DNA of 58,753 bases, the filler included, from Bipalium vagum (taxonomy: Eukaryota): the NCBI GenBank assembly GCA_037834085.1. It is 3 parts of 3 records of this genome, joined end to end, with 100 filler letters (N's around TTAATTAATTAA, not from the genome) between each part and the next. Parts side by side here need not be neighbours in the genome. Positions count along the whole stretch, not along the records: positions 19,907 to 40,080 come from JBBMKC010258756.1; 2 more parts are not named here. The stretch is one strand, 5' to 3'. The notes beneath the pieces were generated by a model, which saw only the letters and a program-made list of their open reading frames with translations, was not told the DNA's origin and searched no databases. The translations under genes and the position numbers were made by a program. This document shows positions 19,907-38,804 of the stretch, one piece after another; position 1 is the first letter of the stretch; the number at the start of each line of letters is the position of its first letter.

Positions 19907-20248
19907 ACGTACAGATACTTAATTGATATTGACATTTAATTATTTAATTAATTATTATCATTTGATTTTCAGTGTGATAACATCTGATTTTTCTTTTGTG
20001 TAAAAACACTTGACTGCAGACATTTACTGATTATTTGAAACGTTTCGTTTGTATTGTTATTTTAGTAATCAAGTGTTGTTCATAATTGTTTTATTCATTC
20101 ATTTGCGTACACATATAGGCTAAGTGAAGGGGTCAGTAACTTTGCAAGCTGAGTGTTACGACAGGGTTCATAGTGAGTTTTAAAAATAATATATGATTCA
20201 GTACTTCTGTGCTCACAGAGTATGAACCTTTCAATTAATATAATTAAT

Positions 20249-20250
<2 letters not shown>

Positions 20251-20304
<54 letters not shown>
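20251..20304. repeat. (TAA)n microsatellite
   Basis: Perfect trinucleotide run. Confidence 0.95.
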
Positions 20305-20306
<2 letters not shown>

Positions 20307-20895: not shown

Positions 20896-20968
20896 CGGAG
20901 ATACCGGGATTCGAACCCGGGATCTTTACATGCGCATGCACTGCTCTGACCGCTGAGCTACATCCCCC
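20896..20968 (-). repeat. tRNA-Ala-like sequence; same family as the 48938-49146 LTR, probably not a functional tRNA
   Basis: GGGGATG TAGCTCAGCGGTCAGAGC..CCGGG TTCGAAT CCCGG TATCTCC has intact A and B boxes, D and T arms, but the anticodon arm is 1 nt short and non-canonical; the 3' flank GATTAATTCTCACTAATA is shared with the copies at 48938 and 49061. Confidence 0.75.
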
Positions 20969-21650: not shown

Positions 21651-24600
21651 ATGAGCCAGTAAGGTTTTATATATTTATATATTAATATTGTGTAATAATA
21701 TTCAATTTTTATACTTTTAAGACAATTTTTGATGCAGTTATAACAGTAATAGAATTGAAATCTTAAAACTCAAATTTCTAAAGCAATTTATATGAAGTTT
21801 TAAGAAATCTCATATTTATATAAAATTTGAATTTTCTGAAAAATTAAAATATAATTTTTTAATTAGTAATAAGGTACATTGTAAGTACCACCCAACTGCA
21901 ACTCTTATTGAGGATTTTAAAGCTGGCGATCTTATTTGTCCCAGGTGTGGATTAGTAGTAGCTGAGAGGTTTCGTTAATATGTCAAAGAAATTTTAATAT
22001 ATCGTGCTTCAGAGTGATTGATTTTGAATCTGAATGGCGGTCTTTTGCCAACGATACAGACTCAAAAGACGTAAGTCGTGTGGGAGAAGTGGAAAATGGT
22101 CTTAAATCAGAAACTGAAACATCGATTACAATACAGCAATCAAATAATATTCGTCATTTGGATGAAAATGGTAATCCTTTATATAAAGGACGGTCAACAC
22201 TCAGTTCATCTGATCGCACATTAAAAACCGCTCATTCTAATATCCGTGCTATGGGTGATCGAATTAATCTACCCAAAACAATAATGGTATTTCTATAGTT
22301 ATATCAAGGGCTTAATTGATGAACATTATATAAATTTACAGGATGAAGCAATGAGTTTGTTCAAACAGGTACACGAATCTAAACAGCTTAGAGGTCGAAA
22401 TAATGAAGCTGTTGCAACTTCATGTTTATTTATGGCATGTCGGAAATTGAAAGTCCCTAGGACATTTAAAGGTATTATATGTTAATATTATATTTTTCCT
22501 TTATGGAGTATATATTGTATAGAAATATGTGCTGTTTCAAATGTATCCAAGAAAGACATTGGAAAAATATTCAAGAAAATTGTTCATATTTTATCAACTA
22601 GTGTCGGTAACGCAACAGGAGAAGATTTCATGGCTCGATTCTGTTACCAGCTTGGCGTTTCGAAAGTTGAAAAGATCGCAAAAGAAATTTCGAAGAAAGC
22701 TCTGGATGACAATATGGTAGCTGGAAGAAGTCCAGTGTCCATAGCAGCTGCTTCGATTTACATGGCTCTACTGGCCATGGGCATAAAAAAAGAAAAGAAA
22801 GGTAATTGGAATCTTATATTATGGGTCCTTCATAGCAACGAGGTTAAGTAAGTTCCCTTCTAAATTCATAACCTGCTCTCATTTGATGCCAATAAAATTG
22901 CGAATCTCCTATCATCTTTCGATAATTTAGTTTTCAATTTATCCTTGAGGGCTATGGTATAATATCTCCCACGTTTTTTGATTGGAGGAGATACATGCGA
23001 TTGGTCATTAAATTGTTTGCCTTTTTTTAATTTTTACTTTGATTTTTTAATCTTAAAATTTGTCCAATTTTTTTCTCTCTCAAATTGTCTCAAAAGTTCG
23101 ATTTTAATAGTCAAATTAGAAAGTAGATTTAAGATGACTACATCAGAGTTTTCCTCAATTATAGTATGATCGAAATCAAAAATTAACAATAATTTACTTT
23201 GATCAAAATTCATTTTAAGATTTTAAATTATAAGCGTATGAACAGCAAAATATCACATAAAAATATCAATCGTGAAACTTTAATGTAATACTTTTAAAAT
23301 TAACAGTATGCAATTAAATTATGATTTATTTATTTAATACAATTAAACTATTTTTGTAAAATGAAGTTTCAAAATTATTTAATATTTAAGTTAACATTAT
23401 AAATTATAATGATTTTATTTTTAGAACTATAAATTAATTTTTTTAATTGTCTTGAAATCTAAAACAAAATTAAAATTAGAAAATTAAAAATTTAAATTAC
23501 CATGGTAATGACCAATCACAGGTATAGTATAGCCTGCTTAGAATTTATTCGTCATTAACTGGAATCTTAATTAAACTTCTTGGTGTTGATGAAAGTTTTA
23601 TCGATAGAACTTATTTAAGAAAACTCGGTTTTTCTGAACAATCGAGAAAAATGATTTTTTCATGTACCAAAACTAATATAAAGGTTAACATAATTTTTAA
23701 TCTGGGTGTACGATAAAACCATTCAAGAAGTTTTTTTATGATGTTACATTTTTAACATGTTTAATTTATATTTATATATTGAAATAATAGGATTATTATT
23801 ATATTTCGTTAAAGAAATCACAAATAATAAGTAAATTTCAATTTTATTTCGGAAAAAAACAAAACCCGGCCAATTCTGTTACTCAATAACATGGTTGGTT
23901 GAATTCTGTAATACTTTGGTGAATAAAATAACTCATAAAAAAATTCATAATCTTTTGTACTTAATTACCATCCAAGTCTCAGCTCTTTTTGTATGTGTTT
24001 CTAAGTTTGTAAAAGTCTGTTTACCGGTAATTAACCAATTCCGAGATACATGATCGCTATCGCCAAAAGATTCTCAATGAGCTCATAATTTTTTTAATTT
24101 TGGAGCTTTCCGTACTCTTGTTGATTTTTCTATGTATTTTCTTTTAAAGTCTGTCTTCCGCTGATTATTATTCTTTGTGTTCTTTTTTTCGTTTTCAACC
24201 TGTAATCTTTTTACGAACCGTTATCAGTGTAAAATTGAATTTAGGGCGCTTTAGAAAATTGGAAACAATGAAGTCGCTTTGTTAAAATTCCTGCCAAGAG
24301 ATATAGTAAGCAACATAATTGCAAGAGAAAAATTCTATTGGAGAGACTGCGATTTTTAAAATGAAACATGTTTGAATCTTCACCATTGTCAGAATTAGTG
24401 ATACTTAACAAAATAAAAAGATTTTGAGTTAGTGAATAGAACTAAAATAAGTTGTATGATACCCATAAAGTAAATGGTATCGTATGTTTTGAAGAAAGAG
24501 GGCTTTTGTAATTGAGAAAATTTTTTTGAATTTATTAAAGAAAAACTGTTTAGTCAATTTATAAAATCTTCACGATATTCCAGTAACAAATAACCGCTGA

Positions 24601-27042
24601 TTTAACCATACAAGACGTGTTATTACTTTGATTTAAAAATAAGCTAGTGATTTATTCCTCCTTCCCTTTTCTTCAGGATTAAATCCTATTGAAGACTATT
24701 TTACCTCTTGTATATCGAAATTATCCAGTATTTCTTTGGAAACCAGCAAAAATGATTTATAAAACTAAAATTATGTGGTTTTACATATGGAATTTTTTGA
24801 TTTTTCAGGCCTGGTTCAGAAATATGAAAAAGCGTCGATATATCTTAAGTTTTTTCTTGATTTCTTAAGGAGTTATTTTTAAATGTATTTATGTATAAGC
24901 CGGAAGCTGTTTTAATGTTATCTTTTTATTTTTCAATGTGCGTTTGTTAATTAAACTGGATGTAACCATTTCTTGTGAAAATATTTTAGTTGTTAAGTCT
25001 GAAAACAATTTCATTATTGATTAATTGTAAAGGTCATTTGACCCAATACGTATGTATTAGGTTGGTACATAAGTTTCCGCTTTTTTAAAATTTTTCATTC
25101 TTGCTATTTTTAGCTTTGTTTTGCTGAGCAAAAATAATTATTTTGAAAGCGCTTTTTTAAAGCTACAAGCATGTAATCATTACTCATTCAATAACTTAAT
25201 TATACGATATATTTTTTAGCTCTACAAGTGAATATTCCAAGCAGCGAAAAATTTCATTTTCGGTATTTATTATATTTTGCCTTTTGCCGTGGTCAGAAAG
25301 CTACAGAAGCAGTTCGAGACATTTTTGCTGTCTATGGAGCTAATGCAATAGGTGCGAGAACCGCTCAAGAATGGTACAACAAATTCAAAAAGGGTAATTT
25401 TGATCTCGAAGATAAATTTCGCTTTGGTCGACTATCCGAATTCGACGAAGAACGTCTTCAGAAGCTTTTAAAGGAGAATGGTTGTCAAACATCCAGAGAA
25501 CTTGCTGAAAAAAATTGCTGCACTCATCAGATAATCCTCATTTGCTTAAAGCCGATCGAGCTTGGATACCTCATAAAATCAGCGACCAAGACAAAGAAAA
25601 TCGTCTCCAAATCGCAGCAGAGAATCGTCATGGGAGACGAGAAATGGTGTCTCTACGTCAATATGAGACAGAGAAAGGAGTGGATAGCTAAAGAAGTCAC
25701 GCCTAAGCCAAGAGTAAAAAAAGAACTTCATACCAAGAAAACAATGATATTTGTATGGTGGATTGGGAGGGTTTAGTGCACTGGGAAATACTTGAGAAAA
25801 ATAGGACTATTAACAAAGAACGAAGCTATCCAACTGAAAAGTTCAGATCGTCGCAGCCATGTTATTTTGATTCAACAACAGCCACACACAGCGAATATAG
25901 TCAAAATAGCTCTCCAAGAGCTCAAATGGGAGATTTTTCAACGTCCGCCGTACTCTCTTGACCTTGCGCAACCTGGCTTTCACCTCTACCGCTCATTGTC
26001 TAATCAAATGAGGGGTGTGACGTTCAAGAACGAGGAGGATCTCAAAAACTGGCTCAACAAATTCTGGGGATTTCTGGAGAAATGGTATCAACAACTTGAT
26101 CGAGAGGTGAGAGAAGGTCGTGAACAATAACGGAGACTATATTACTGATTGATTTATTACTTGTAATATTAATAAAATAATAGTTGGTTTTCACAAAAAA
26201 AATTTCAATAAAAAAACACGGGAACTTATGTACCAACCTAATATATGTTTGTAGTCGGAAGTTGCAACCACCCTTCAAGCGATGCAAGAACGTGAGTTAA
26301 AGTGGCCGTAAATAATCTTCAGTTGCTTAACCATTTTACAATGATTTTATTCTGATTTTCAAAATCTCGATTTCTTTCCCTATTAGAAACAAATTTAGAG
26401 ATTCTATAATAATAAATGAAATCGACCAATGGAATTGAACCATTGATCATTATAATTTTATAATGAATTGAAGCGGTTATTTTGAATTCGAAAATAAGTT
26501 TCTCTTATGTAATTATAAACTAATCTCAACTCCGTCTCAATTTTATTCCAGAGACAGAAATTTGTCTATGTTAAATAAAATATTGATTAAACATAGAAAA
26601 TATTATTGAAATCTGTAAAAATTGATTTAGAAATAATTTAGACATGATTTCAATTTTTAATTGTGAAAGAAAAATTTAATTTTTTAACTTAATTTTTTAT
26701 TTCCAAACATTGGGAATTATTTTCGCGCCCAGTCCACATCGCAATATTAAATATAAATTCAGTCTGGTAATGGTTTCGAATTTGGTACGCTGTTTTTTTG
26801 TATTTCAAATGTGTAAAATCCCGTTGACTCTGAGATAGGAACCAATCGATTTTATTTAGATTTAATTTGTTGAAATTAATTTTGTCAATATTTCTTTCTA
26901 TATAAAAGATATTGGAGAAGTGGCTGGAGTTGCTGAAGGGACTTTGAATGTTGTGTACAAACTGATGCGTCCTCACGCAGAGAAGCTATTCCCATCCAAC
27001 ATAACACCGGTCGTTCCGCTGAACCAGCTTCCATTATTTTAG
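21651..27042 (+). CDS. GTF2B: General transcription initiation factor IIB, copy 1 (6 exons: 21651-21658, 21867-21968, 22013-22286, 22342-22471, 22523-22801, 26909-27042; 308 aa)
   Basis: Spliced at GT-AG sites the exons total 927 nt with an open frame ending in TAG. Motifs: Zn ribbon [21 protein letters not shown]-reader [15 protein letters not shown], repeat 1 [31 protein letters not shown], repeat 2 [16 protein letters not shown]-terminal GVAEGTL..YKLM..LFP..LP. The 8-nt first exon (ATGAGCCA|gtaagg) is inferred from phase. Confidence 0.95.
24200..24850 (+). mobile_element. Highly decayed IS630/Tc1-like transposase remnant inside TFIIB-1 intron 5
   Basis: [13 protein letters not shown] near 24650-24705 resembles the xLPPYSPxLNPIExxF motif. 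Confidence 0.45.
25057..26241 (+). mobile_element. mariner element with TIRs, internally deleted, inside TFIIB-1 intron 5
   Basis: TA|TTAGGTTGGTACATAAGTT .. AACTTATGTACCAACCTAA|TA; [17 protein letters not shown]; three overlapping frameshifted ORFs. Confidence 0.92.
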
Positions 27043-30000
27043 AATTGATATTAATTAGTTACATTTCTCGGATTTTTTATAAATTTCTTAATAAAAAATT
27101 GTTTCATTGGTACTCTGACCGATGGATAGGCGCGGGCTTTAGTCATGTGTGATGAAATTAATTTACTTCGGTTTTCAGAAAGATGTTCTATATATGTGTG
27201 TGCTTAGAATGAGTGATGTGCTGCTACGCTTTGTTGAATTCATGTAATACATTAATTGTAAAATACATTTTGTCATTTTATTCCCATTTGTGTGTTTTTG
27301 TGAAATTTGAACTAGCTTTTCTAATTTATTATGATTTTTTCTAGTTATTGCTCCACCTGTTTGAAAAGTTGAATAAATAAAATTTTATTTATCCATTACC
27401 TGTGATATATAAAAACAAAATTAAATTTACTATACAAGGTTCCAAGAATCTTAATTTTTTATGACCAATTTATTAAATTTAAATTCTGTATTTGCCTCTA
27501 ATGCTGTAAAATATTAAATTACATTGTTTAGAGGTATTAAAATGTTAATTAATCTCAAATTCTCTGATATAAAGGTATTAGAAATTTGATATACACAATA
27601 GAAGATGTTATTGCATATAATTGGAATATTTGAAAGTCTTAAACTTGAGTTAAATTTTTTAAGGAATAATAAACGATAAAAAATGCTTAAATGAATATCA
27701 CAGCAGTAAATCGAATAAAGATTTATCAGTTAAAACGTCAGCCTCAAATTGTAAGTTTTAATCAAAATAATAAAATCGATCAATATAACAAAGAAATCTT
27801 AAACCAAAGAAAGATAAAATAATTATCAGTACAACAGTAAACTGATCAATGAATCGTTCTAAAAAAAACAGTTTATTGTATTAACAATAAACTATTCGTT
27901 TTTATTTTTCTAACAAACATTTTAGCAATATGATCCTCATTAATTAAATAAAAAGTTATCTGATAAGTAACAAGAATCTGTCGTCAGTAATATTCTACGA
28001 AACGTTTTCTCAATCACCCTGAAATACATATTAATACTTTCAAGTTACAACCCCAAGATCCCATCAAGACTGATCGTTGCCTTGAAATAACGTGTTCAAG
28101 ACAACTACGTCTTTAGTATACACCTTCGTAAAGTCAGTGCATTCGGTATCCGCGGCAGTAAAGAGTAATCATCAAAAGGTTTTAATGAAAAAAAACGCTG
28201 AGCGTGTGTAGAGAATCATGCTTATTATTTTAAGTTATTGTAGCCATTAGTTTTTGATACATTCAATCTTTCCGAATTCTTCATTACCTAAATCGAACTC
28301 ATGATTGATGACGTTTTTACATCAATGTTCGTTTATTGCTAAAACCTTGACTGGAATAATTACTTAAGTTTACTTTCAAAATAGCTTCTAAATAATCGTC
28401 GGTTTTCAGTGGACTGGTTAAGTAAACTTCTCCACTACGTAAACGTCTAAACCATTATTTAACAAACTTTATTTTACTCAATTACTTTTAAATAAAAATG
28501 ATAATTAATAATATAACTTGTGAGTTCGCTAAGGACACGACCCGGGAGATCACAAAAGGAGGTTCAAAATCCAGCGGACAATCCAGGAAACCATTGTCGT
28601 TCAGAGTGAGCATATTTTTTTTGTTACCTTAAAAATTGGCTTGTTTCAATAGTTTTGATTATTGCTTAGAATTTTTTATAATTAAATTGACATTTAATAA
28701 AGATATATTAATTATTTTAGTATAATTCTCCTTTGATTGGACCTATTGATTGAACTGATAGATTCCTAGTGTATTTCTGATTGATTTTATTATAATAAAG
28801 CTTTCTGTGATTATTTTGATTCATTTGCGTGGATAGACGATAATGTTTTCTAGATATTTTGATTTATCTGAGGATAGACTCTCATGGTTCTTCAGATTTA
28901 ACTGACTTGTTATCAACAAAATATAAAATTATTAAACTTCGAGCTTAAAGTTACATATTCGATTTAGTTAAATGTTGACAGAACTGAGGAGATTCCCAGA
29001 CTGAGCCTCCAAATAAAAATTTTCTCAAAATAACCTTTGAACATTTATTGTGTGCATGAATAATAGAAAATTATTTTTATTCATTATAAAACATTTTATT
29101 TTTATGAAAAATTATATGTAGATCTTCTTTCATATTAATTATAAAAATAATTTATTCAAACCAAAGTCTTATATAATCTCTAACTTTCCTTTGCTGAATA
29201 TTGTTGCGATTTCTTTAGCCATTCAGTTGTTTTTGTTCCGTCTAGACCCTTCAATTCGATTTGATATGGAGATGAAAATTTCTGATTTCGTAGGGACCCT
29301 CATACTGGAAATCATTCTTCTTTCGATTCTGATGTTCTTTCCTGACTAATACTTGTTTTATCTTTTATTTCTATTGAATATTCTAAAACCAGTCCATAAG
29401 CAAAACCTGGATTAATTTTAATTTTAATTTCATTAATATTCTCATTAAATATATTTTTCACAATTTACCATTTCATTTCTCCTGTTGGTAAATCTTGAAT
29501 ATATAAGCTATTTTCAACATAATATAATAAATAATTCTGTTCTCTTTTTATTATATGAAATAAATGTCATTTCGAAATTTTCATTTTTAAACTTGTTTTA
29601 CGTTTTCAATAATACATCCAAATTTTCTATTTCCTAAAACTGAACTTATTCCAAATCTAATTCCTTAATCAAAAATAATAGTTTATCATAACTTTCATCT
29701 TTGTAATATTTTAGTTTTACTTTTGTATATTTTCTAAATGCTAACCATGCTAATCCTGATAATCAATAACAATAATAAGAATCAAATCCAAAATCTTTAA
29801 AATTTAATCTTAATAAAATAATTCTTCTAAAATTAAAAAATATTTTTAAATGTCATAGTATAATCTAACATTTTTATATTTTAATTCATTCCAATTTCTA
29901 ATAGCTTTTATATACTTTTTAATTCCTATGTTTGATTGTCTTAAAGTTAAATAAAAATTTTGATAAGATGGAATATTTTCTTCATTAATTATTTCTATAA

Positions 30001-30469
30001 TATCATTAAATTTTCTGTTTTTGAATATATTCATAAGGAAAGATTCATTTTAAATTTCTAAATCAATATTCTTTTAAAATTTTACATCATTCAAAGTTGA
30101 ACTAATAAATTCTAAACTACATATGGTTTGAAAATCTTAAATGCATCTAAAATTCTTATACAACCAATTTTTTTTCTATATACCACCTAGGTGCTGTATA
30201 ATTGTGAACTGGGTTTTTTTATTAAAAAGATTTTAAGATTTTAAAAGTAATTCTCCTGAATATTTTCCTGTTGCAAATTAATTTAAAAATTTATTATTTT
30301 TAATAGCTGATTGATGTCACCGCCTCTATGAGGCGTCGTGAACTCTGTCCAATTACATGCTGTTTTAATAAAAAGATTGGATATTTTTCTTTTAATTTTT
30401 AATAGAACTTTTATTAGTTTTTTTTCATTAGTACTTTTATTAGTAATTTTTCTAAAATGAATGTTTGTA

Positions 30470-31720
30470 TCAGGCAACGAACTAAGCTTTTTTGTTTTTT
30501 CAGTTGTTAAAAGTTGTTAGTCCCTGGGATTCTCATTTATCTACCGATTTAAATTTTCTTTGTTTTATATTGCTACTCTTAAACGTGTGAGTTTAAAATT
30601 TACTTTATAATTAATGTTTTTAACCATTATCCTCTGAAAACGTGCTCCAAAAGTTCACTGGACAAATCACAAATTCGAGCAATTATTTATTACAAATGGA
30701 AAAATAACACAGGCACAAATGAAGGAACAATGCAACTGCGAACAGTGCAAAATTGGTTCAAAAAATTCAATAGTGGAAATTTTTTATTGAAAGACAAAGA
30801 GAGGTCTGGAATGCCAAAAGAGTTGGAGGATTATAAAATTATAAACCTTCTTGAACTAAACAGATTAATTATTGCTAAAAATCGTTTCTGAGTCATCGAT
30901 ACAGTCATAAGAAACCGACTGAAATCGTTAGGATTCATTTGTAAACTCGAAAAATGGGTTCCACATCAACTAGCTGAAAAAAAGTTGGATCGCATTAAAA
31001 TATGTTCAAGACTACTCGAAAGAAACTGAAATGATCCTTTTATCGACCGGATAGTCAATTGCGATGAAAAGTGGATCTATCATAACAACATAATGAGACA
31101 AAGATTGTGGTCGTTGAAAGAAAAGCCTCCGCAAATAATTGAAAAACGTAACCTTACACGAAACAAGGTTCATTTATGCATTTAATGAGATTCTCGTGGA
31201 ATTATTTATCAAGAGTTTCTCAAATGCGGGGAAACCATTAATTTTGATGTATATTGTGAAATGTTAAAAAGAGTTCATGCCATTATGAAGGAAGATCGGA
31301 GCAGTTTGATAAACCGAAAACAAGTGATTTTCCACGAAGATAATGCCAAGCGTCACAAATCAATAGGACATTGAAGGAATTGAACTGGATTCTAATAGAA
31401 CATCCGCCATATAGTCCCAATATCGCCTCATCCGGTTTTATTTGTTCCGGGTATTACAGAATCACTTGATGGGTAAAAATTGTAAGAGTTCCGATGCTAT
31501 AAAGAATGAAGTTCTTTCTTTCTTTCATTCAAAAGATCGAGATTTCTTTAACACTGGGATCAATAAAATTCTAAATAGATGGGAAGCAGTAACATAAAAA
31601 GATGTGGGATATTTGGATGATTAATTGTTTAATAATGTATTATGATTAATAAATTAAATTTAACTTAAGTCTTTGTTTATTTTTTAATTAAAAAACGAAA
31701 AAACTTAGTTAGTTACCTGA
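30470..31720 (+). mobile_element. mariner element with TIRs inserted into the polB remnant
   Basis: TA|TCAGGCAACGAACTAAG .. CTTAGTTAGTTACCTGA|TA; WVPHQL, IVNCDEKW, FHEDNAK, HPPYSPNIA. Confidence 0.9.
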
Positions 31721-31939
31721 TATTTAAATGTTTATTCTTATTATATTTTGAAATACTTTTATTACAAATTTCACAAAAATATGATTCAGTCATTTATTTA
31801 AAATAGAAAATAAAGATGTATTTTGTTAAATCAAAAATGTTATTGTTAATGTATTAAAATCAGTAATACTAATCAGTAATATTATTATCAGTAATAATAA
31901 TTTTCAGTAATACTACAAGCGGTATAGGACGCGTGTACC

Positions 31940-33842
31940 AAAATAGTTCCACGGAGTGAAACTCTTAAAATCAATATATTTATTAAATTAATTAAAAATA
32001 GTCGTGTAAGACTTTAACATTATAATTTTATACACACACACAAATTCATACAACACACATACACATACATACATGGTTGACTTTGAAATGTACTTTTATG
32101 ATATATGTGATCTTGATAAAATTTGAATAGAAATATTAATTAACTTTATATATATTTTCTACATTATTTTCGATATAAATGTTCTGTATGCATTTATTTT
32201 ATTTTCTTAAAATTAATAACTTCAAAACATTTAATTATACTTTAGAATATTTTTATTAAATTTTTTAATATCGTGTAAATTTAATGGAAAACTAATATTT
32301 TCTAAATTTATATATTTTAAATAATTATAATAGTTATGTAGAAATTCAGCTTTATTTACAACAGGAGTAGTGGAAAAACAATTTGGAAACCCAACACCCA
32401 AGATAAAGTATATTTCATGGTCAAACGTGTATGTGTGACTCATGTAAATTTAAAATATTTGAAAGAAGTTAGAAAAGATTTATTAAATGAAATTAGTGTA
32501 AATAGAATAGTAATTAGAAAAATTAATTCTCTTTTATTTAATATTCAGAGTGAAGTAAAATCATGTGAAGAAGAAAAAATTTTTAAAAAACTAAAATAGA
32601 AAAAATTTAAATAGAAATTTTACAATTTAATAGAAGGTCCAAAAAATTTGAAAGAATTCGAAAGCAATCTAGAATTTATTTTATATCATTGGTTGAAACA
32701 CTCACACAATGGCAAATTGAATTAACAAATTCAAATTCAAAAGATTTTAAGATAGTTGAAAATAATAACAAAATGTTAAATGATTTTATCACAAAAATAA
32801 CAAATGATAATAATAACCTTCATGAACTAATAAGTAAAATGAGAATAAAATTAAAGTTTATTTGCAGTTGATGATTATAAAAACATGTGTGAAAAAATTA
32901 CACTTATAGTTTGTTGGTAATCTTATTGAAAATCTTCAACAATAGATATTATAAATTCTTAAAACTCAGAAATCAATTTAACCAAGTTAGGAAGTTGAAC
33001 ATGCAAAAATAATAATTACTGAATGTAAAGAAAATATTTTAAAAATTAAAAACGGAAATGTTATTGAAAATGTAAACATAGAAGTTAAAAAAACTGAAAT
33101 AAGAGCTTACAAAGAATATAAAGAGAAGTTGCAAGCTTCATTCTTGAAATGAAAAGATATAGAAAAAATGAAAAAAGTGAAATCTTCCTGATTTAAAATG
33201 GCTGTGAATGAAGTTCAAAAAAGAATTGAAGATTTTTAAAAATTAATAGAAACAAAAATTAAATGTGAAACTATTCAATTAAATCAATGGAAAGCAGAAA
33301 GAGGATTAGCTATAGATTTATATACATTTTATAAACCAGTTACTAATGCTCTAAGCACATAGGTGTTGTCTGATAAATTTGAGAATCAAATACTTTTAGA
33401 AGATAAAAATCAAAAAACTATAGAAACTAAAAAAAATCCTAATCAAATTTAAGATGAGGTTTAAGTAAAGGCTAATAAAAAGTTAAATACTCTACTTGAT
33501 GAAAAAGTTGAAGAAGAAAACCCTCCTAAATATGTTGATGATTATTATAAAAAAATATTTGATACTGGAGATAGAAGAATTGCTGCTAAAATAAATCCAT
33601 CTGTTTGAGGAAATCTTTTATTAATAAATAAAAAAAATATTCCAAATAATCAATAATAAATATAATCTTACAAATAATTATATATATCCATTTTCATCCG
33701 TCTATAAACTAAGGATTTAAAAAATTAATTTATTTAATTGTAAAATATAAAATTATTAAGTTAAAGTCTTACCCCGTTAGACTAATTTTAATTAATTTAA
33801 TAAATACATTGATATTTATTGTTAACAGCGTGGAACTATTTT
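31940..33842. repeat. ~90-bp imperfect inverted repeat pair (31940-32030 / ~33748-33842)
   Basis: AAAATAGTTCCACG..TATTTATTAAATTAATTAAAA..TAGTC..GTAAGACTTTAAC is present in reverse complement ending CGTGGAACTATTTT at 33842. Confidence 0.8.
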
Positions 33843-34414
33843 AAACTAATTTGATTTTATTTCTCTAATCAAAATCATGGTTATTTAAAGGTCGAATTCA
33901 TCTTCATCTGAAGATATATAGTCATCGTAGGTGCCTCTTCGAGGGTCAGTAGAAATTATACAATCAACATTAAAGTCAGAAGATTTCTAAAATTCAACAT
34001 TTTTCTCACTAACTTTTTAAATTATATTTACAATAATGTAGTTAAATATATAGTAATCTAAATCTTGAATATTGATAAGCTAGTTGTTAAATGTTTATTC
34101 AAAAATAGAAATCTGATTTACTAATATGTATATTCTAATTAGATAAATAAGTTTTTATTTTATTAAATGATTTAATTGTTTGAGATAAATGATAATAAAT
34201 ACTACCAATATTTATTTTATTAAGAAAAGTATTATTTATTAAATGATTTTGATTGAGTAAATATTCTTTAAGGATTTCTATAACTTTTGTACCTCTTGCT
34301 AGACTTGAATCAATGTGCAATATTCTTTTAGATATTTCCACATTATACCAGTACACAAAAGACAGGGATCCACTAGTTGGAGAGTTAGTGGGACTCATAT
34401 ATTAAACGATATCA

Positions 34415-34800
34415 GTGATTATTCCCAAGGAGGGGCCCCGAACGATTTACAGAAGGAAAGACGAGGATGTGGAAATTCCTGGTATTGAAGTGGGGGCAAT
34501 TGCGGAAGAAGACAATTTTCTTATTACAGAGAGAGTGATGAATGGGAGACCAATTATCACTTTGGAAATACAAGGACAAAGTTTAGATTGCTTATTGGAT
34601 ACGGCAGCTGGGGTAAGCGTGATGAGCAGAAAAATTATGAGTAAACTGAAAAAAGTGGAAGTAGTGAAGACCAATGACAGGTTACGATGCGTAAACAATA
34701 GCCAATTGGAAATAGTCGGAAAATGCTCGGTTTGTGTGGCAGTGGGTTAGGAATCGAAACTAGTGAACTTTACAGTAGTAGAGGATGTCAAAGGATGAGA
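34415..34800 (+). mobile_element. Gypsy-type LTR retrotransposon aspartic protease remnant
   Basis: RPIITLEIQGQSLDCLLDTAAGVSVMS..LRCVNNSQLEIVG is a retropepsin signature (DTG changed to DTA). Confidence 0.8.
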
Positions 34801-35983
34801 GCGTTTCAGACGGATAATAGAACTATTAAGAGCAGCGAACAACGGACGACTAGTGCAGGTAATCAAAGAGAGCGAGGATGTTTTTATGGCCAACAAGTGG
34901 GATATCGGTTGTACTCACCTATCAAAACATCACATTCGGAAAACAGGAGAACCGACCAATCTAGATTTTTCTAGATAAGTAGTGGGAAAACAATGATGAA
35001 ACTCAAGACCTAAGATTTTTATTTTATTTTAATATTCCTAAAGTCTTTGAATGAGCAATAGTAAGCGATGTTGTGCTCCTTTTATTATTGTAGGTACAAA
35101 AAGTTAAATACCAATTTGAATCAAAAACCACACAATAAAACTTTATCCGCTCTCTAATTGAATAAAAGACAATCACAATAAAACTTTATTGATACGCAAA
35201 ACTGCACCTTTACACAGAAATATTAATCACTCACAGAATCAGTATCAGTCAAATGTCTAATAAGCACAATTTCAAAATTTTCCACTTTTCGCAAAATATC
35301 AAGGAATAAAATTAAAACATGTAATCGAATAAAATTTAAAAATTATTATATTAATTATAACCAATCGAAATAATAACCAAAGACAATTTTCAGTTAAAGA
35401 AAAATATTACAACTACCAATTAATTATTGCAAAAGAAAATGACAAAAAGAAATCAATAAATAAATAGCCTCACCAGAAGCGACAAGGGGTCCCCAGGCGT
35501 CCACTAGGTCCTTTTCAGGTCACCTAGGGATTCCCAAACTCGCTGGGTCCCCTTGATAAATCCTTTTGGGTATCTGACATAACTAGAAAAAAAATGAAAT
35601 TTACTGAATCAGATAATCTTTTGAATTTCGTTGACTTTTCCAAATGAATAATCTTCTTGAATACCTTTTGACTTTTCAAAACGAATAATGATAATAAAAA
35701 AAACTTGTGTCGCTTTATATTTTTGAGCAAATTTCTGATTGATCTGCGAGCACCAATCCCTTCACTCGAAACGGCTATTTCATTCAATATCCCATAAATC
35801 CTAACTTTGTCTCCACGCCAAAATAGAGTTAATGAAAACAAAATTCTAATTATTTATTATCCCCACAACCGAATATATCTCATAATTTTAACTTTAAATT
35901 ACCATAATTTACGATTTTGATATATTGTTTTTGGTAATTTCTTTAAAAATTAAAAATATTATTCTTTTTTAAAATTAAAATTG

Positions 35984-35984
<1 letters not shown>

Positions 35985-36065
<81 letters not shown>
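35985..36065. repeat. (ATT)n microsatellite
   Basis: Near-perfect trinucleotide run. Confidence 0.95.
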
Positions 36066-37259
36066 CACGGTTTATGCCTTTGGCACACCAAACAAAATGC
36101 TTAATATTAGCGATAATATATTTTTATTTTTTAGTTTCTTAAAAGTATCATTCAATAATTATAAAATTTTTAGAATCTTCGACTATAATTCGAATTCTAA
36201 AATATGGAAACTTGATGATTACAGAGATATTAGGACTTATGATCACAAGATTAGTATTAAGATAGAGTAGTAGAATATAATATAACTTGATATGGTTCAA
36301 TTTCAGAATTGGAGACGATAGTGCTATCTGAATTTAAGGAAATTGTAGATCCGTTACGGAGGAAAACATGAATCTTAATACTCAAACCTCGTCTGCTTAT
36401 ATTTTCTGATGACTGATTGCAAACACTGATATCAAGTGCACTCTGACTTTAAGTGGATGTAAAGTAAAGAGGGGTTTGCCTTAGCACTTTTCCCAAAGCG
36501 ACCACTAACTTTGAAAAGGCACACTATGATCCAGACTCCAGAAGCCAACTTAGAGTAACTGACTCAACCGGCATCATCCATCTGTGGAATTATATGGTTT
36601 GTGTGTCTACAAATTAATTTTTAAAATTCATTTCATGATAATCAATATAACTTAAGTTCCCACCCATTACCAAAGATTGGATAATGATCGATAATTGTGA
36701 CAGCGAAACGCATCCTTGGAGTTCGGTAATTTTGCATTGGAGACTGAAGAGGCACTGAACTTAAAAGTCACATTTATAATTAATACTATGTTGTTTATGG
36801 AATTATTATAAGATATATCGTATAGAAGAGGTACTTAAAATCATAAGCTTATGATTATGCTTTAAACTTATGCTTTTCAATTATTATATTTAACTTGAAT
36901 TCTTAATATTTTTACTATGAATTCCATTCAATTTATCCATTAGAGTATATATGAAATAGGAAAATTTCTGGTTATTTTAAACTATATAATGTTAAAATTA
37001 ACTTTAAAAAGAAAATTAAATTAAGACATAAATTTATGAATTAATTATTCTTTATTATTGTTTTTTAAATTTAATTCATATTGATAAAATAATTTATTAT
37101 TAAAAATCATTAAATTTCAAACTTTTTATATTTTTTCTATTTGCAATTAAATTTTTTTGAAATTTAATCACTTTAAAGAATAAAATATTATTTTTGTTTA
37201 TTAATAAAAGCTTTTGTTTAAAACGAATAATAATTAATTCCCTGTGATTACCTCATTTC

Positions 37260-38804
37260 ATGCGTTTTGAGTTAGTGAATTTAGTTTTAAAATAATTTGT
37301 AATTTATTGAAGCTTCGTCCTATTTTGCATGTTATATTAAAAATCCATACTTTTAGTAAAATATTCTGTAAATACCATCCAACAGCTATTCTAATTGAAG
37401 ATTTCACTGCTGGAGATTTAGTATGCCCAGTTTGTGGTCTTGTAGTTGGAGATAGGTAACAATAAATAAATCAAGCTATCCCTAATATCATTAGTTAGAG
37501 TCATAGATTTTAATTCCGAGTGGCGATCATTTGCCAATGATGGTACAGGAGAAGACAGTTCCAGAGTCGGAGTAACTGAAAATAATTTAAATTCCGAGGC
37601 AACAACATCAATTACTATACAATCGTCTCACGACGCTCGATATCTAGATGAAAACGGCAATCAAAAATATAAAGGTAGGACAGCAATGTCCTCTGCGGAA
37701 AGAATGATCGCACAATGTCGAAATCATATCAATACAATAGGAGGTCGTTTAAATGCAGACTTAAATACAAAGGTAAATTTTATATCTGAAATTCAGTATT
37801 TACAAAGATTTTAAGAACCACGCAATGGCGATAGTAAAGAAATTGACTACTATTACGGAGTTTAGTAGAAAAAATAAAGAAGATATTGCTTGTGCTTGTC
37901 TGTTTTTTGCATTCCGAGAACAAAAGGTTGAAAGAAGCTTCAAGGGTATGTTTTATTTAGTTTCATTAAAAATCATTTATCAAGTAATCAATACTTCATA
38001 AAAATATTAATTGGTTCCACTTGGAATATTTAAAATTATAACTAAATTTAGGAGTTTTAAAGTTTGTACAATTTATGGGGCCTAAATTTTGAAACAGACT
38101 TTACAAAAAAACGACCATATTTTTGAATCAATTTTTAAAATCTAACTTTTTAGATAAATCAAGTTATAATTATACATATTGAGATTTATTTTTTCATTAT
38201 ACAAAGACATTAGAGTGACTAAAGTTGATTTTACTAATAATTTCAAAATTCACATCCTAAAAAAAGTTTCATTGAGTCTGGTTTCCATTTTTTTACCTCA
38301 TAAAATCAAAATATTGAGTTTCATTTTGTTTTAAATTATTTTTTTAGAAATTTGTACAGTCTCGAAGTCCTCGGTCAAAGATATCGGTAAGACATTCAAG
38401 AAAATTATGGCTGCCCTGGGAGTTGAGACCCAAACTTCTAACTTAACCGACCAAATGTCTCGGTTCTGCTGCAATTTGAATTTGAAGAATAAATTCATTC
38501 CTAAACTTGCTCTGGAAATTGTGAATGAAGCTAAAAAGTTCATTTTTAAAAAGCCTTCCACAATGATCGCCACATCGATCTATGTAGCAAGTTTTCTGAT
38601 GAATGAAGAGATCACCAAGAAAAGTATGTATCTGTATGTACGTTTGCTATCTCAACACGTTTAGGGATTTTTGAAATTGTGGACGTAACGGAAAACACAA
38701 TCTCTTCGGCATACAAGCTGTTTTATAAACATCGACATACTTTGGTTCCTTCATCTATCCTTCCGAAATTGTTGAGGTCTTTAAACGAACTACCTGAATC
38801 TTAA
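37260..38804 (+). CDS. GTF2B: TFIIB paralog, copy 2, divergent core (6 exons: 37260-37270, 37357-37455, 37499-37772, 37816-37945, 38348-38623, 38665-38804; 309 aa)
   Basis: 930 nt spliced open frame ending in TAA. Same five intron positions and phases as copy 1, exons 3 and 4 identical in size (274, 130 nt). [41 protein letters not shown] retained. First exon (ATGCGTTTTGA|gttagt) inferred from phase. Confidence 0.92.

What the first reader, a model, noticed from the sequence alone, without database searches (positions are those of the whole stretch)
37260..38804. Intact second TFIIB with conserved polymerase-facing half but remodelled TBP/DNA-binding core: candidate alternative pre-initiation factor
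Seen: a tandem duplicate ~10 kb downstream of TFIIB-1 on the same contig, with all five introns kept and a full 309-aa open frame, while nearly every transposon around it is riddled with stops. Divergence is asymmetric: Zn ribbon 24/30 identical and EWRSF/SRVG kept, but exon 4 only 16/43 identical. LRGR becomes FSRK, VPRT becomes VERS, AGRSPVS becomes FKKPST, GVAEGT becomes DVTENT. Established: TFIIB is usually single-copy in animals; the Zn ribbon/B-reader dock on Pol II, and the two GR dipeptides (human G153/R154, G247/R248) lie on the TBP-DNA binding surface. Inference: a selected paralog that still recruits Pol II but works with a different TBP-family partner or promoter class (e.g. germline or stage-specific), or acts as a competitor.
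Basis: partly seen in the sequence, partly recalled or inferred. Interest (0 to 1): 0.82.

Follow-up and report, generated by a model that had tools for sequence, protein, structure and literature searches.

The report
Conserved divergent second TFIIB gene
Next to its ordinary TFIIB gene, this AT-rich invertebrate genome carries a second intact TFIIB gene from an old, selectively maintained and so far unnamed paralog family that keeps the polymerase-docking half but has rebuilt the promoter-DNA-contacting core, so it may be an alternative RNA polymerase II initiation factor in an animal.

Summary
Two TFIIB genes lie on the + strand: copy 1 at 21651-27042 (308 aa) and copy 2 at 37260-38804 (309 aa). 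Each has six exons. The five GT-AG introns sit at identical positions and phases.

- **Age:** the copies are 47% identical and synonymous sites are saturated, so the duplication is ancient.
- **Family:** copy 2 has relatives in a monophyletic clade (100/99 support): P0049 (63% identical), P0003, P0004, P0006, P0008, P0011 and fragments. This clade is sister to the copy-1 clade.
- **Replaced:** the BREd loop G153-R154 becomes R-K (G153R in 7/7), and G247-R248 becomes x-K.
- **Rate:** acceleration is confined to the cyclin core. Against a mammal outgroup, the N-terminal halves of both copies are equally distant.
- **Selection:** within the paralog clade pN is 0.35 at pS 0.77, so purifying selection acts in every domain.

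My best reading is a functional variant Pol II initiation factor that still binds a TBP-type partner but reads flanking promoter DNA differently. No RNA data could be found, so expression and role are inferred. The organism is unidentified; a free-living flatworm is my guess. No characterised animal TFIIB paralog turned up in the papers searched.

The parts
37260..37270 (+). Copy 2 exon 1: ATG plus 8 nt, donor GT at 37271 (model only)
   Evidence: It is analogous to copy 1's 8-nt first coding exon, which mRNA L005 confirms. The frame upstream of exon 2 has no in-frame ATG.
37357..37455 (+). Copy 2 exon 2: zinc ribbon (C-x2-H ... C-x2-C)
   Evidence: Pfam Zn_Ribbon_TF 33.1 bits against a cut-off of 29. 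It is 24/33 identical to copy 1. All four zinc ligands are kept.
37499..37772 (+). Copy 2 exon 3: B-reader, B-linker and the start of cyclin repeat 1
   Evidence: It is 48/91 identical to copy 1. E51, W52, R53 and R66 equivalents are kept. It was the query that recovered the paralog family.
37816..37945 (+). Copy 2 exon 4: cyclin repeat 1 core. It holds the remodelled BREd loop (F-S-R-K-N-K), the retained R169 equivalent, and VERS in place of VPRT
   Evidence: It is 16/43 identical to copy 1. Pfam TFIIB repeat scores 16.1 bits on this partial domain. Site table.
38348..38623 (+). Copy 2 exon 5: the end of repeat 1 and most of repeat 2. It holds the K-N-K insertion and F-K-K-P-S in place of A-G-R-S-P
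   Evidence: Pfam TFIIB repeat 31 bits against a cut-off of 23.6. It is 35/89 identical to copy 1. Alignment.
38665..38804 (+). Copy 2 exon 6: last helices of repeat 2 (the HTH region) and the TAA stop
   Evidence: It is 18/43 identical to copy 1.
21651..27042 (+). Copy 1, the canonical TFIIB. Exons: 21651-21658, 21867-21968, 22013-22286, 22342-22471, 22523-22801, 26909-27042. Intron 5 is 4.1 kb
   Evidence: It is 94% identical over all 308 aa to P0163, which is encoded by a poly(A) mRNA contig L005. pN is 0.038 at pS 0.75.
25228..26130 (+). Degenerate Mos1-type mariner inside intron 5 of copy 1 (context, not part of the gene)
   Evidence: Pfam HTH_48 at 1.8e-15 and Transposase_1 at 1e-8. The frame is broken into several ORFs.
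27043..37259 (.). 10.2-kb spacer between the two genes. It holds mariner fragments (about 30730-31597), a retroelement protease fragment (34415-34750) and an (ATT)n tract (35966-36068)
   Evidence: Outside exon 5 there is no DNA-level similarity between the flanks or introns of the two copies.

Best explanation
Copy 2 is a functional member of an old, lineage-specific TFIIB paralog family. The family arose by DNA-level duplication of the canonical gene, because all introns are shared, and copy 2 has stayed beside that gene.

The protein keeps the module that docks on and works inside Pol II: the zinc ribbon, the B-reader and the B-linker. This module has evolved no faster than in the canonical copy. 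The protein also keeps the arginine needed to bind the TBP stirrup.

The cyclin-fold core has evolved much faster. The DNA-recognition loop of repeat 1 (G153-R154, BREd contact) has been fixed as a new basic motif, R-K-N-K. The matching G-R loop of repeat 2 has become x-K.

The most likely mechanism is that it assembles with a TBP-type protein and Pol II into a pre-initiation complex whose preference for DNA flanking the TBP site, and probably for regulators that touch the core, differs from canonical TFIIB. It would therefore serve a subset of promoters or cell types.

Shown here: gene structure, family membership, site-by-site conservation, purifying selection and the TFIIB fold of the closest relative. 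Inferred: Pol II and TBP binding, altered DNA preference, and any tissue or stage restriction.
For: **Structure and age**
- Frame intact, with ten canonical splice sites and identical intron positions.
- Ancient duplication: pS 0.77, saturated. Neutral drift of 10% would close the frame in 99.7% of trials.

**The family exists elsewhere**
- P0049 (63% identical), P0003, P0004, P0006, P0008, P0011, P0001 and P0002.
- The careful ML tree gives the paralog clade 100/99, the copy-1 clade 98/97 and the two together 100/99.
- The profile search separates the family (346-465 bits) from every canonical TFIIB (248 bits or less).

**Site table**
- Zinc ligands are kept, with one C15Y exception in P0006; E51, W52, R53 and R66 are kept in 7/7.
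- R169 is R in 6/7 and K in 1/7. K189 is kept in 6/7.
- G153 becomes R in 7/7. R154 becomes K in 5/7. N156 becomes K. R248 becomes K in 6/7.
- Conserved columns in paralogs against canonical: Zn 21 v 18 of 42, reader/linker 39 v 30 of 70, cyclin 1 34 v 50 of 95, cyclin 2 20 v 44 of 109.

**Outgroup test**
- The N-terminal halves of copy 1 and copy 2 are equally distant from a mammal (51% and 49% identity each).
- The core is 56/43% identical for copy 1 and 33/32% for copy 2.

**Selection inside the paralog clade**
- Copy 2 against P0006 gives pN 0.35 at pS 0.77. By domain, pN is 0.29, 0.37 and 0.40.

**Fold**
- The AF2 model of P0049 has pLDDT 81. Its best matches are TFIIB in Pol II PICs, and its core matches 1c9b with TM 0.78.

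**Literature**
- G153Q:R154A loses BREd contact (PMC4529316).
- R169E, and R169E/K188E, lose TBP binding (PMC6004067).
- A conserved Arg and Thr of TFIIB/TFB contact the TBP glutamates (PMC7221094).
Against: - There is no expression evidence for copy 2. No RNA run holds the locus, and the only run laid was DNA.
- Transcript-like evidence for the family is indirect. P0008 lies on two Logan contigs of about 1.13 kb, from two runs, with nearly the same ends. Their DNA could not be read.
- Constraint on the paralog is about ten times weaker than on copy 1 (pN 0.35 against 0.038 at the same saturation). Much of the core change could therefore be relaxation rather than new function.
- K188 is not kept.
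- The BREu-reading residues V283 and R286 are already lost in copy 1, so promoter reading in this lineage may differ from the human model used for the inference.
- Binding to Pol II, TBP and DNA is untested.
- Copy 2 itself could not be folded or searched as a joined protein.
Confidence: 0.6

Rival explanations
1. Subfunctionalised duplicate. Copy 2 does the same biochemical job as canonical TFIIB but is expressed in other cells or stages. The core changes are mostly relaxed constraint plus compensatory drift, with no new promoter or partner specificity.
For: Many core sites conserved in canonical TFIIB are simply variable in the paralogs: 26 in cyclin 1 and 29 in cyclin 2. R169, K189 and all Pol II-facing residues are kept. 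The basic character of both changed loops is kept (K-G-R to R-K-x-K, and G-R to x-K).
Against: The BREd-loop replacement is fixed across the family (G153R 7/7, with neighbouring K residues), and a K-N-K insertion in repeat 2 recurs. This looks like a selected new motif rather than drift. Type-II sites cluster at human positions 142-156.
Confidence: 0.22
2. Competitor or negative regulator. Copy 2 occupies the Pol II dock and/or TBP but forms unproductive complexes, which damps transcription.
For: The Pol II-docking half is fully conserved while the promoter-facing half is degraded relative to canonical TFIIB.
Against: The B-reader and B-linker act in start-site selection and opening, and they are as conserved as in canonical TFIIB (39 of 70 columns). 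The TBP-contact Arg is kept. A pure decoy would not need these. Both cyclin folds are predicted to be intact in P0049.
Confidence: 0.1
3. Pseudogene in waiting. Copy 2 has recently lost function and has not yet acquired a disabling mutation.
For: No RNA evidence. It lies in a transposon-rich stretch. It has the weakest Pfam scores of the two copies.
Against: The frame is open and all ten splice sites are intact at 46% nucleotide divergence. The codon-position pattern is 0.45/0.32/0.62, and only 3 of 1000 frames survive 10% neutral drift. Family-specific motifs are still intact in copy 2. pN is well below pS against other family members.
Confidence: 0.04
4. A TFIIB-like factor that has moved to another polymerase system, in a BRF- or Rrn7/TAF1B-like role.
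For: TFIIB-like factors have been recruited to Pol I and Pol III several times, and in plants to other roles (PMC7865254, PMC10671200).
Against: It has no C-terminal extension. Its length (309 aa) and domain order match TFIIB. It nests inside TFIIB next to copy 1. The Pol II-specific reader and linker residues are conserved. Foldseek ranks Brf2 and Pol III complexes far below TFIIB.
Confidence: 0.04

Closest known systems
Canonical animal TFIIB (GTF2B), including copy 1 of this window
   Same: Length, zinc ribbon, B-reader, B-linker and two cyclin repeats. It shares all five intron positions with copy 1. R169 and K189 are kept. The closest family member aligns to human TFIIB end to end (E 1.7e-61) and folds like it.
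   Different: Only 47% identical to copy 1 and 38% to mammalian TFIIB. The core is 33/32% identical to mammal, against 56/43% for copy 1. The BREd loop G153-R154 is replaced by R-K, G247-R248 by x-K, VPRT by VERS, and repeat 2 has a K-N-K insertion.
[quoted passage not shown]
   Same: A divergent TFIIB paralog beside a canonical TFIIB in one genome, proposed to recruit Pol II to a special class of sites.
   Different: Emit3 is far more diverged (24% to its canonical partner) and, according to that paper, lacks the B-reader element. The origin is independent (ciliate against animal). No functional data exist for copy 2.
Plant TFIIB-related proteins (pBRP2, BRP4, BRP5/PTF2 and others; PMC7865254, PMC10671200, PMC4036515, PMC3044737)
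   Same: A lineage-specific expansion of TFIIB-like factors. Several act in gametogenesis or reproductive tissue.
   Different: An independent expansion in plants. The family here is in an animal, is small, and lies beside the canonical gene.
Animal germline variants of other general factors (TBPL2/TFIIA in oocytes, PMC7755920; TBP-related factors, PMC3142196)
   Same: The concept of a paralogous core initiation factor that changes promoter usage in particular cells.
   Different: Those are TBP or TFIIA paralogs. No TFIIB counterpart in animals turned up in the papers I searched.
BRF1, BRF2 and TAF1B/Rrn7 (TFIIB-like factors of Pol III and Pol I)
   Same: Zinc ribbon plus two cyclin repeats, with a conserved TBP-contact Arg in Brf1 and Brf2 (PMC7221094).
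   Different: They have long C-terminal extensions and ancient separate origins. Copy 2 nests within TFIIB, and Brf2 is a far weaker structural match.

Membership tests
TFIIB (Pol II general transcription factor) | N-terminal zinc ribbon with C-x2-H/C ... C-x2-C ligands | tested here: met
   Pfam Zn_Ribbon_TF scores 33.1 bits against a cut-off of 29 on exon 2. C15, H18, C34 and C37 equivalents are present in copy 2.
TFIIB (Pol II general transcription factor) | B-reader and B-linker with the conserved E-W-R and S-R-V-G motifs | tested here: met
   E51, W52, R53 and R66 equivalents are kept in copy 2 and in 7/7 paralogs. 39 of 70 reader/linker columns are conserved in the family.
TFIIB (Pol II general transcription factor) | Two cyclin-like repeats (Pfam PF00382 twice) with the TFIIB core fold | tested here: met
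   Exon 5 scores 31 bits against a cut-off of 23.6. Exon 4, a partial repeat, scores 16.1 bits. The fold was tested only on the closest relative, P0049: pLDDT 81, core against 1c9b TM 0.78. Copy 2 itself was not folded.
TFIIB (Pol II general transcription factor) | TBP-stirrup contact residues (R169, plus K188 and the conserved Thr) | tested here: inconclusive
   R169 is kept. K188 becomes V, and K189 is kept. The position I take for the Thr (T176) is Ser in copy 2. The role of R169 and K188 comes from PMC6004067. The Thr numbering is my inference. Binding was not tested.
TFIIB (Pol II general transcription factor) | BREd recognition loop G153-R154 | tested here: not met
   It is replaced by R-K in copy 2, and G153R holds in 7/7 family members. 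The loop's function comes from PMC4529316. This is a feature of canonical animal TFIIB, not of the wider superfamily.
TFIIB (Pol II general transcription factor) | Phylogenetic placement within the TFIIB clade | tested here: met
   Copy 2 and its relatives are sister to the copy-1 clade (100/99), inside animal TFIIBs. No non-animal or BRF outgroup was included.
BRF1/BRF2 (Pol III TFIIB-related factors) | C-terminal extension beyond the cyclin repeats that binds TBP/Bdp1 | tested here: not met
   The protein ends about 25 residues after repeat 2, as TFIIB does. Brf2 chains rank 30th or lower with 12% identity.
Processed or decaying pseudogene | Loss of introns, frame disruptions, or non-synonymous divergence equal to synonymous | tested here: not met
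   All five introns are kept with GT-AG ends and there is no internal stop. pN is 0.35-0.43 against pS 0.77 versus other family members.

The most novel reading that the evidence does not exclude
An animal lineage (possibly flatworms) has evolved a dedicated second TFIIB. Together with a TBP-family paralog, it forms an orthogonal Pol II pre-initiation system for a special promoter class, for example germline or stem-cell genes or transposon-derived small-RNA precursors. This would be the TFIIB counterpart of TBPL2/TFIIA in oocytes, or of Tetrahymena Emit3.
Probability: 0.15. Interest if true: 0.85.

Novelty: new variant of a known kind. Interest (0 to 1): 0.62.

Why it matters
In animals, cell-type-specific versions of the core Pol II machinery are known for TBP, TAFs and TFIIA. 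TFIIB is usually treated as a single invariant bridge between TBP-DNA and Pol II.

The family found here is conserved and unnamed, and it has three features:
- It keeps the Pol II-facing module at canonical rates.
- It keeps the TBP-contact arginine.
- It has fixed a new basic motif in the BREd-reading loop.

That makes it a natural experiment in re-targeting the pre-initiation complex through TFIIB. If it is expressed in a restricted way, it would show that TFIIB can also be a point of promoter-class selection in animals. It would also give a defined set of substitutions (human positions 142-156 and 247-248) to test for core-promoter specificity.

Tried and rejected
- **RNA evidence.** The look-up of sequencing runs found only one DNA holder and no RNA run. 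Read laying on it shows one DNA contig identical to the window, which says nothing about expression.
- **Word search with copy 2 exon 5.** No hit. This is expected from the length filter, and I take nothing from it.
- **Organism identity.** Names are coded. No hit in the copy-1 or paralog clades carries an organism name. Sample accessions were not found in any paper. Rfam found only a tRNA-like hit. My flatworm guess rests on four things:
  - Macrostomum is the best canonical hit to the paralog profile and the next named branch in the tree.
  - Several gene models exist only in UniParc.
  - The genome is AT-rich with 41-53-nt introns.
  - Mariners are present.

  This guess is not established.
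- The joined (spliced) copy 2 protein was not sent to any search, family-scan, fold or complex tool. Searches were run exon by exon by reference, and the fold was made on the database relative P0049. The joined coding sequences were used only inside local scripts, for pairwise alignment, substitution counts and trees.
- **Recent tandem duplication or gene conversion.** Rejected. Synonymous sites are saturated, and outside a 67-nt stretch of exon 5 the two loci share no DNA similarity.
- **A third TFIIB copy or fragments in the piece.** None found by tblastn.
Full report
**1. What is in the sequence**

The piece 19907-40080 is AT-rich, 21-35% G+C. Reading the DNA and checking frames and splice sites by script gives two six-exon genes on the + strand.

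- Copy 1 has exons 21651-21658, 21867-21968, 22013-22286, 22342-22471, 22523-22801 and 26909-27042, and encodes 308 aa.
- Copy 2 has exons 37260-37270, 37357-37455, 37499-37772, 37816-37945, 38348-38623 and 38665-38804, and encodes 309 aa.

All ten introns are GT-AG. The five intron positions and phases are the same in the two genes. Copy 1's introns are 208, 44, 53, 51 and 4108 nt; copy 2's are 86, 43, 43, 402 and 41 nt. Copy 1's long last intron carries a degenerate Mos1-type mariner.

Per-exon Pfam scans identify the TFIIB zinc ribbon and TFIIB repeats in both genes. Scores are clearly lower for the repeats of copy 2: 16.1 and 31 bits, against 41.5 and 59.2 in copy 1. The zinc ribbon scores are nearly equal, 33.1 against 36.1. 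tblastn finds no third copy in the piece.

**2. Are the gene models right?**

Copy 1 is 94% identical over its whole length to P0163. P0163 is encoded without interruption on a 1173-nt contig (L005) that ends in AATAAA plus a poly(A) run, so it is an mRNA of a related species. This confirms every copy 1 junction, including the 8-nt first coding exon.

A genomic contig of another relative (L004) has exons 2-5 with introns at the same places.

For copy 2 the support is homology only. The model aligns without breaks at four of the five junctions to the database protein P0049, with a 2-residue gap near the last junction. The 11-nt first exon is a model built by analogy with copy 1. The frame upstream of exon 2 has no in-frame ATG.

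**3. Age and selection**

The copies are 47% identical in protein and 54% in nucleotides. Differences by codon position are 0.45, 0.32 and 0.62. pS is 0.77, which is saturated, and pN is 0.37. Apart from 67 nt of exon 5, the two loci share no DNA similarity. The duplication is therefore ancient, not a recent tandem event.

In simulations with this base composition, 5% neutral divergence leaves 49 of 1000 frames open and 10% leaves 3 of 1000. Copy 2 has thus been kept open by selection for essentially all of its history.

**4. It belongs to a family**

An exhaustive HMMER search with exon 3, followed by a profile word search, recovered relatives that share copy 2's peculiarities.

| Protein | Length | Source |
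|---|---|---|
| P0049 | 310 aa, 63% identical to copy 2 | UniParc-only gene model |
| P0003 | 364 aa | UniParc-only gene model |
| P0004 | 323 aa | UniParc-only gene model |
| P0001 | fragment | UniParc-only gene model |
| P0006 | 287 aa | intron-less on a JGI contig, L001 |
| P0011 | 298 aa | intron-less on two ENA contigs, L002 and L003 |
| P0008 | 297 aa | two Logan contigs of about 1.13 kb, from two runs, with nearly the same ends, as transcripts would have |
| P0002 | fragment | reads into an intron at the position of copy 2's intron 3 |

Against the family profile these proteins score 346-465 bits. The best canonical TFIIB scores 248 bits.

In a careful ML tree (LG+C20):
- the family is one clade (100/99);
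- copy 1, P0163 and P0164 form another (98/97);
- the two together are separated from all other animal TFIIBs (100/99);
- next out are the unnamed P0165/P0020 and then Macrostomum.

P0008 and P0011 are long branches and their exact place is unsure.

Copy 1 and the paralogs also share lineage-specific motifs, for example SEWRSFAND and TSITI in the linker. This argues against a long-branch artefact.

Over the N-terminal 126-127 residues, copy 1 against P0164 and copy 2 against P0049 both give 96/126 identities. That is what one would see if these are the two genes of one other species and the N-terminal halves evolve at the same rate. Whether they come from one species is not known.

**5. Where the change is**

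The cyclin repeats are 56% and 43% identical for copy 1 but 33% and 32% for copy 2.

| Region | Conserved columns, paralogs | Conserved columns, canonical set |
|---|---|---|
| Zn ribbon (42) | 21 | 18 |
| Reader/linker (70) | 39 | 30 |
| Cyclin 1 (95) | 34 | 50 |
| Cyclin 2 (109) | 20 | 44 |

Sites that are conserved but different cluster at human positions 142-156: F142V, Q144K, V145L, L151F, G153R (7/7), R154K (5/7) and N156K. R248K (6/7) adds to these, G247 is lost, and repeat 2 has a recurrent K-N-K insertion.

Kept are the zinc ligands, E51/W52/R53/R66, R169 (R in 6/7, K in 1/7) and K189 (6/7). K188 is not kept. V283 and R286, the BREu-reading residues in human TFIIB by my own knowledge, are already different in copy 1.

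Inside the paralog clade, copy 2 against P0006 gives pS 0.77 and pN 0.35. By domain, pN is 0.29 (N half), 0.37 (cyclin 1) and 0.40 (cyclin 2). Copy 1 against P0163 gives pN 0.038 at the same saturation. The paralog is therefore under purifying selection everywhere, but roughly ten times weaker than on the canonical gene.

**6. Fold**

P0049, modelled with a 35-row alignment that included copy 2's exons as rows, gives mean pLDDT 81. It has two five-helix repeats and a low-confidence reader/linker, as expected for free TFIIB.

Foldseek's best matches are TFIIB chains of human Pol II pre-initiation complexes. The core matches 1c9b with TM 0.78 and rmsd 3.5 Å. Brf2 and cyclins rank far lower. P0049 also aligns to human TFIIB residues 13-314 by sequence (E 1.7e-61).

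**7. What the changed and kept residues mean**

From the literature:
- The G153-R154 loop of repeat 1 makes the sequence-specific contact with the element downstream of TATA (BREd), and G153Q:R154A loses it (PMC4529316).
- R169E abolishes binding to the TBP-TATA complex, and R169E/K188E is worse (PMC6004067, citing Tansey and Herr 1997).
- A conserved Arg and Thr of TFIIB/TFB contact the two conserved glutamates of the TBP C-terminal stirrup, and Brf1 and Brf2 keep the Arg (PMC7221094).

In copy 2 the Arg is kept. The position I take to be that Thr (T176) is Ser; this numbering is my inference.

The sequence therefore points to a protein that still docks on Pol II and still uses the classical TBP-stirrup contact, but reads or grips the DNA flanking the TBP site differently and presents a different core surface to regulators.

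**8. Comparison with what is known**

TFIIB-like expansions with specialised, often reproductive, roles are known in two groups:
- plants (PMC7865254, PMC10671200, PMC4036515, PMC3044737);
- Tetrahymena, where the stage-specific Emit3 drives transposon-related ncRNA transcription and has lost the B-reader (PMC12082453).

In animals, paralogous core factors are known for TBP and TFIIA (PMC3142196, PMC7755920). My literature searches found no characterised animal TFIIB paralog.

The hit list does show sporadic extra TFIIB genes in a few other animals: Parthenolecanium, Aphidius and Bradybaena. Duplication as such is therefore not unique.

What is new here is a conserved, multi-source family with a coherent pattern of retained and replaced functional sites, still sitting next to the parent gene. 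I rate it a new variant of a known kind.

**9. Limits**

- There are no expression data for copy 2.
- The organism is unidentified. A free-living flatworm is a guess based on tree neighbours and the nature of the database records.
- It is unknown whether the UniParc proteins come from one genome or several.
- As the operators required, the joined copy 2 protein was not submitted to any search, fold or complex tool. It was used only in local scripts.
- No complex prediction was possible, because no TBP of this organism was available.

Noticed in passing
window 25228-26130 (+): A degenerate Mos1-type mariner transposase (HTH_48 and partial DDE), split over several frames, sits inside the 4.1-kb last intron of canonical TFIIB. 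This intron is 41 nt in copy 2.
   Followed up: partly
window 23037-23213 (-): A 59-aa ORF matches the N-terminus of the PHOSPHO-type 'Put_Phosphatase' family (PF06888, 32 bits). It lies antisense inside intron 5 of copy 1. Any further exons would have to lie beyond the TFIIB exons, so it is either a fragment or a gene that nests TFIIB exons 1-5 in its intron.
   Followed up: no
window 20896-20967 (-): A tRNA-like gene about 700 nt upstream of copy 1. Rfam tRNA scores 48.4 bits, but ARAGORN cannot assign an amino acid and reports an odd two-base anticodon call.
   Followed up: no
window 34415-34978 (+): A retroelement fragment with a weak aspartyl-protease match (gag-asp_proteas/RVP, below cut-off) lies in the spacer between the two TFIIB genes. 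Mariner fragments lie at about 30730-31597.
   Followed up: partly
window 20236-20305 and 35966-36068: Long (AAT)n and (ATT)n microsatellites form a 15.6-kb-spaced inverted pair around copy 1 and the spacer. This is probably coincidental simple sequence.
   Followed up: no
L001 680-1543; L002 2283-3179; L003 2023-2919: The family members P0006 and P0011 are intron-less on genomic-looking contigs, whereas the window's copy 2 keeps all five introns. Either those lineages lost the introns or a retrocopy replaced the gene.
   Followed up: partly
L002 3441-4438: The AT-rich contig that carries P0011 switches, after a mariner N-terminal fragment, to a GC-rich stretch with bacterial-looking ORFs. This could be a metagenome mis-join or a foreign insertion.
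   Followed up: no
one search hit list: A few other animals have two distinct TFIIB proteins on record: Parthenolecanium corni, Aphidius gifuensis, and adjacent genes in Bradybaena similaris. One of the Parthenolecanium proteins sits on a longish branch in the tree.
   Followed up: no
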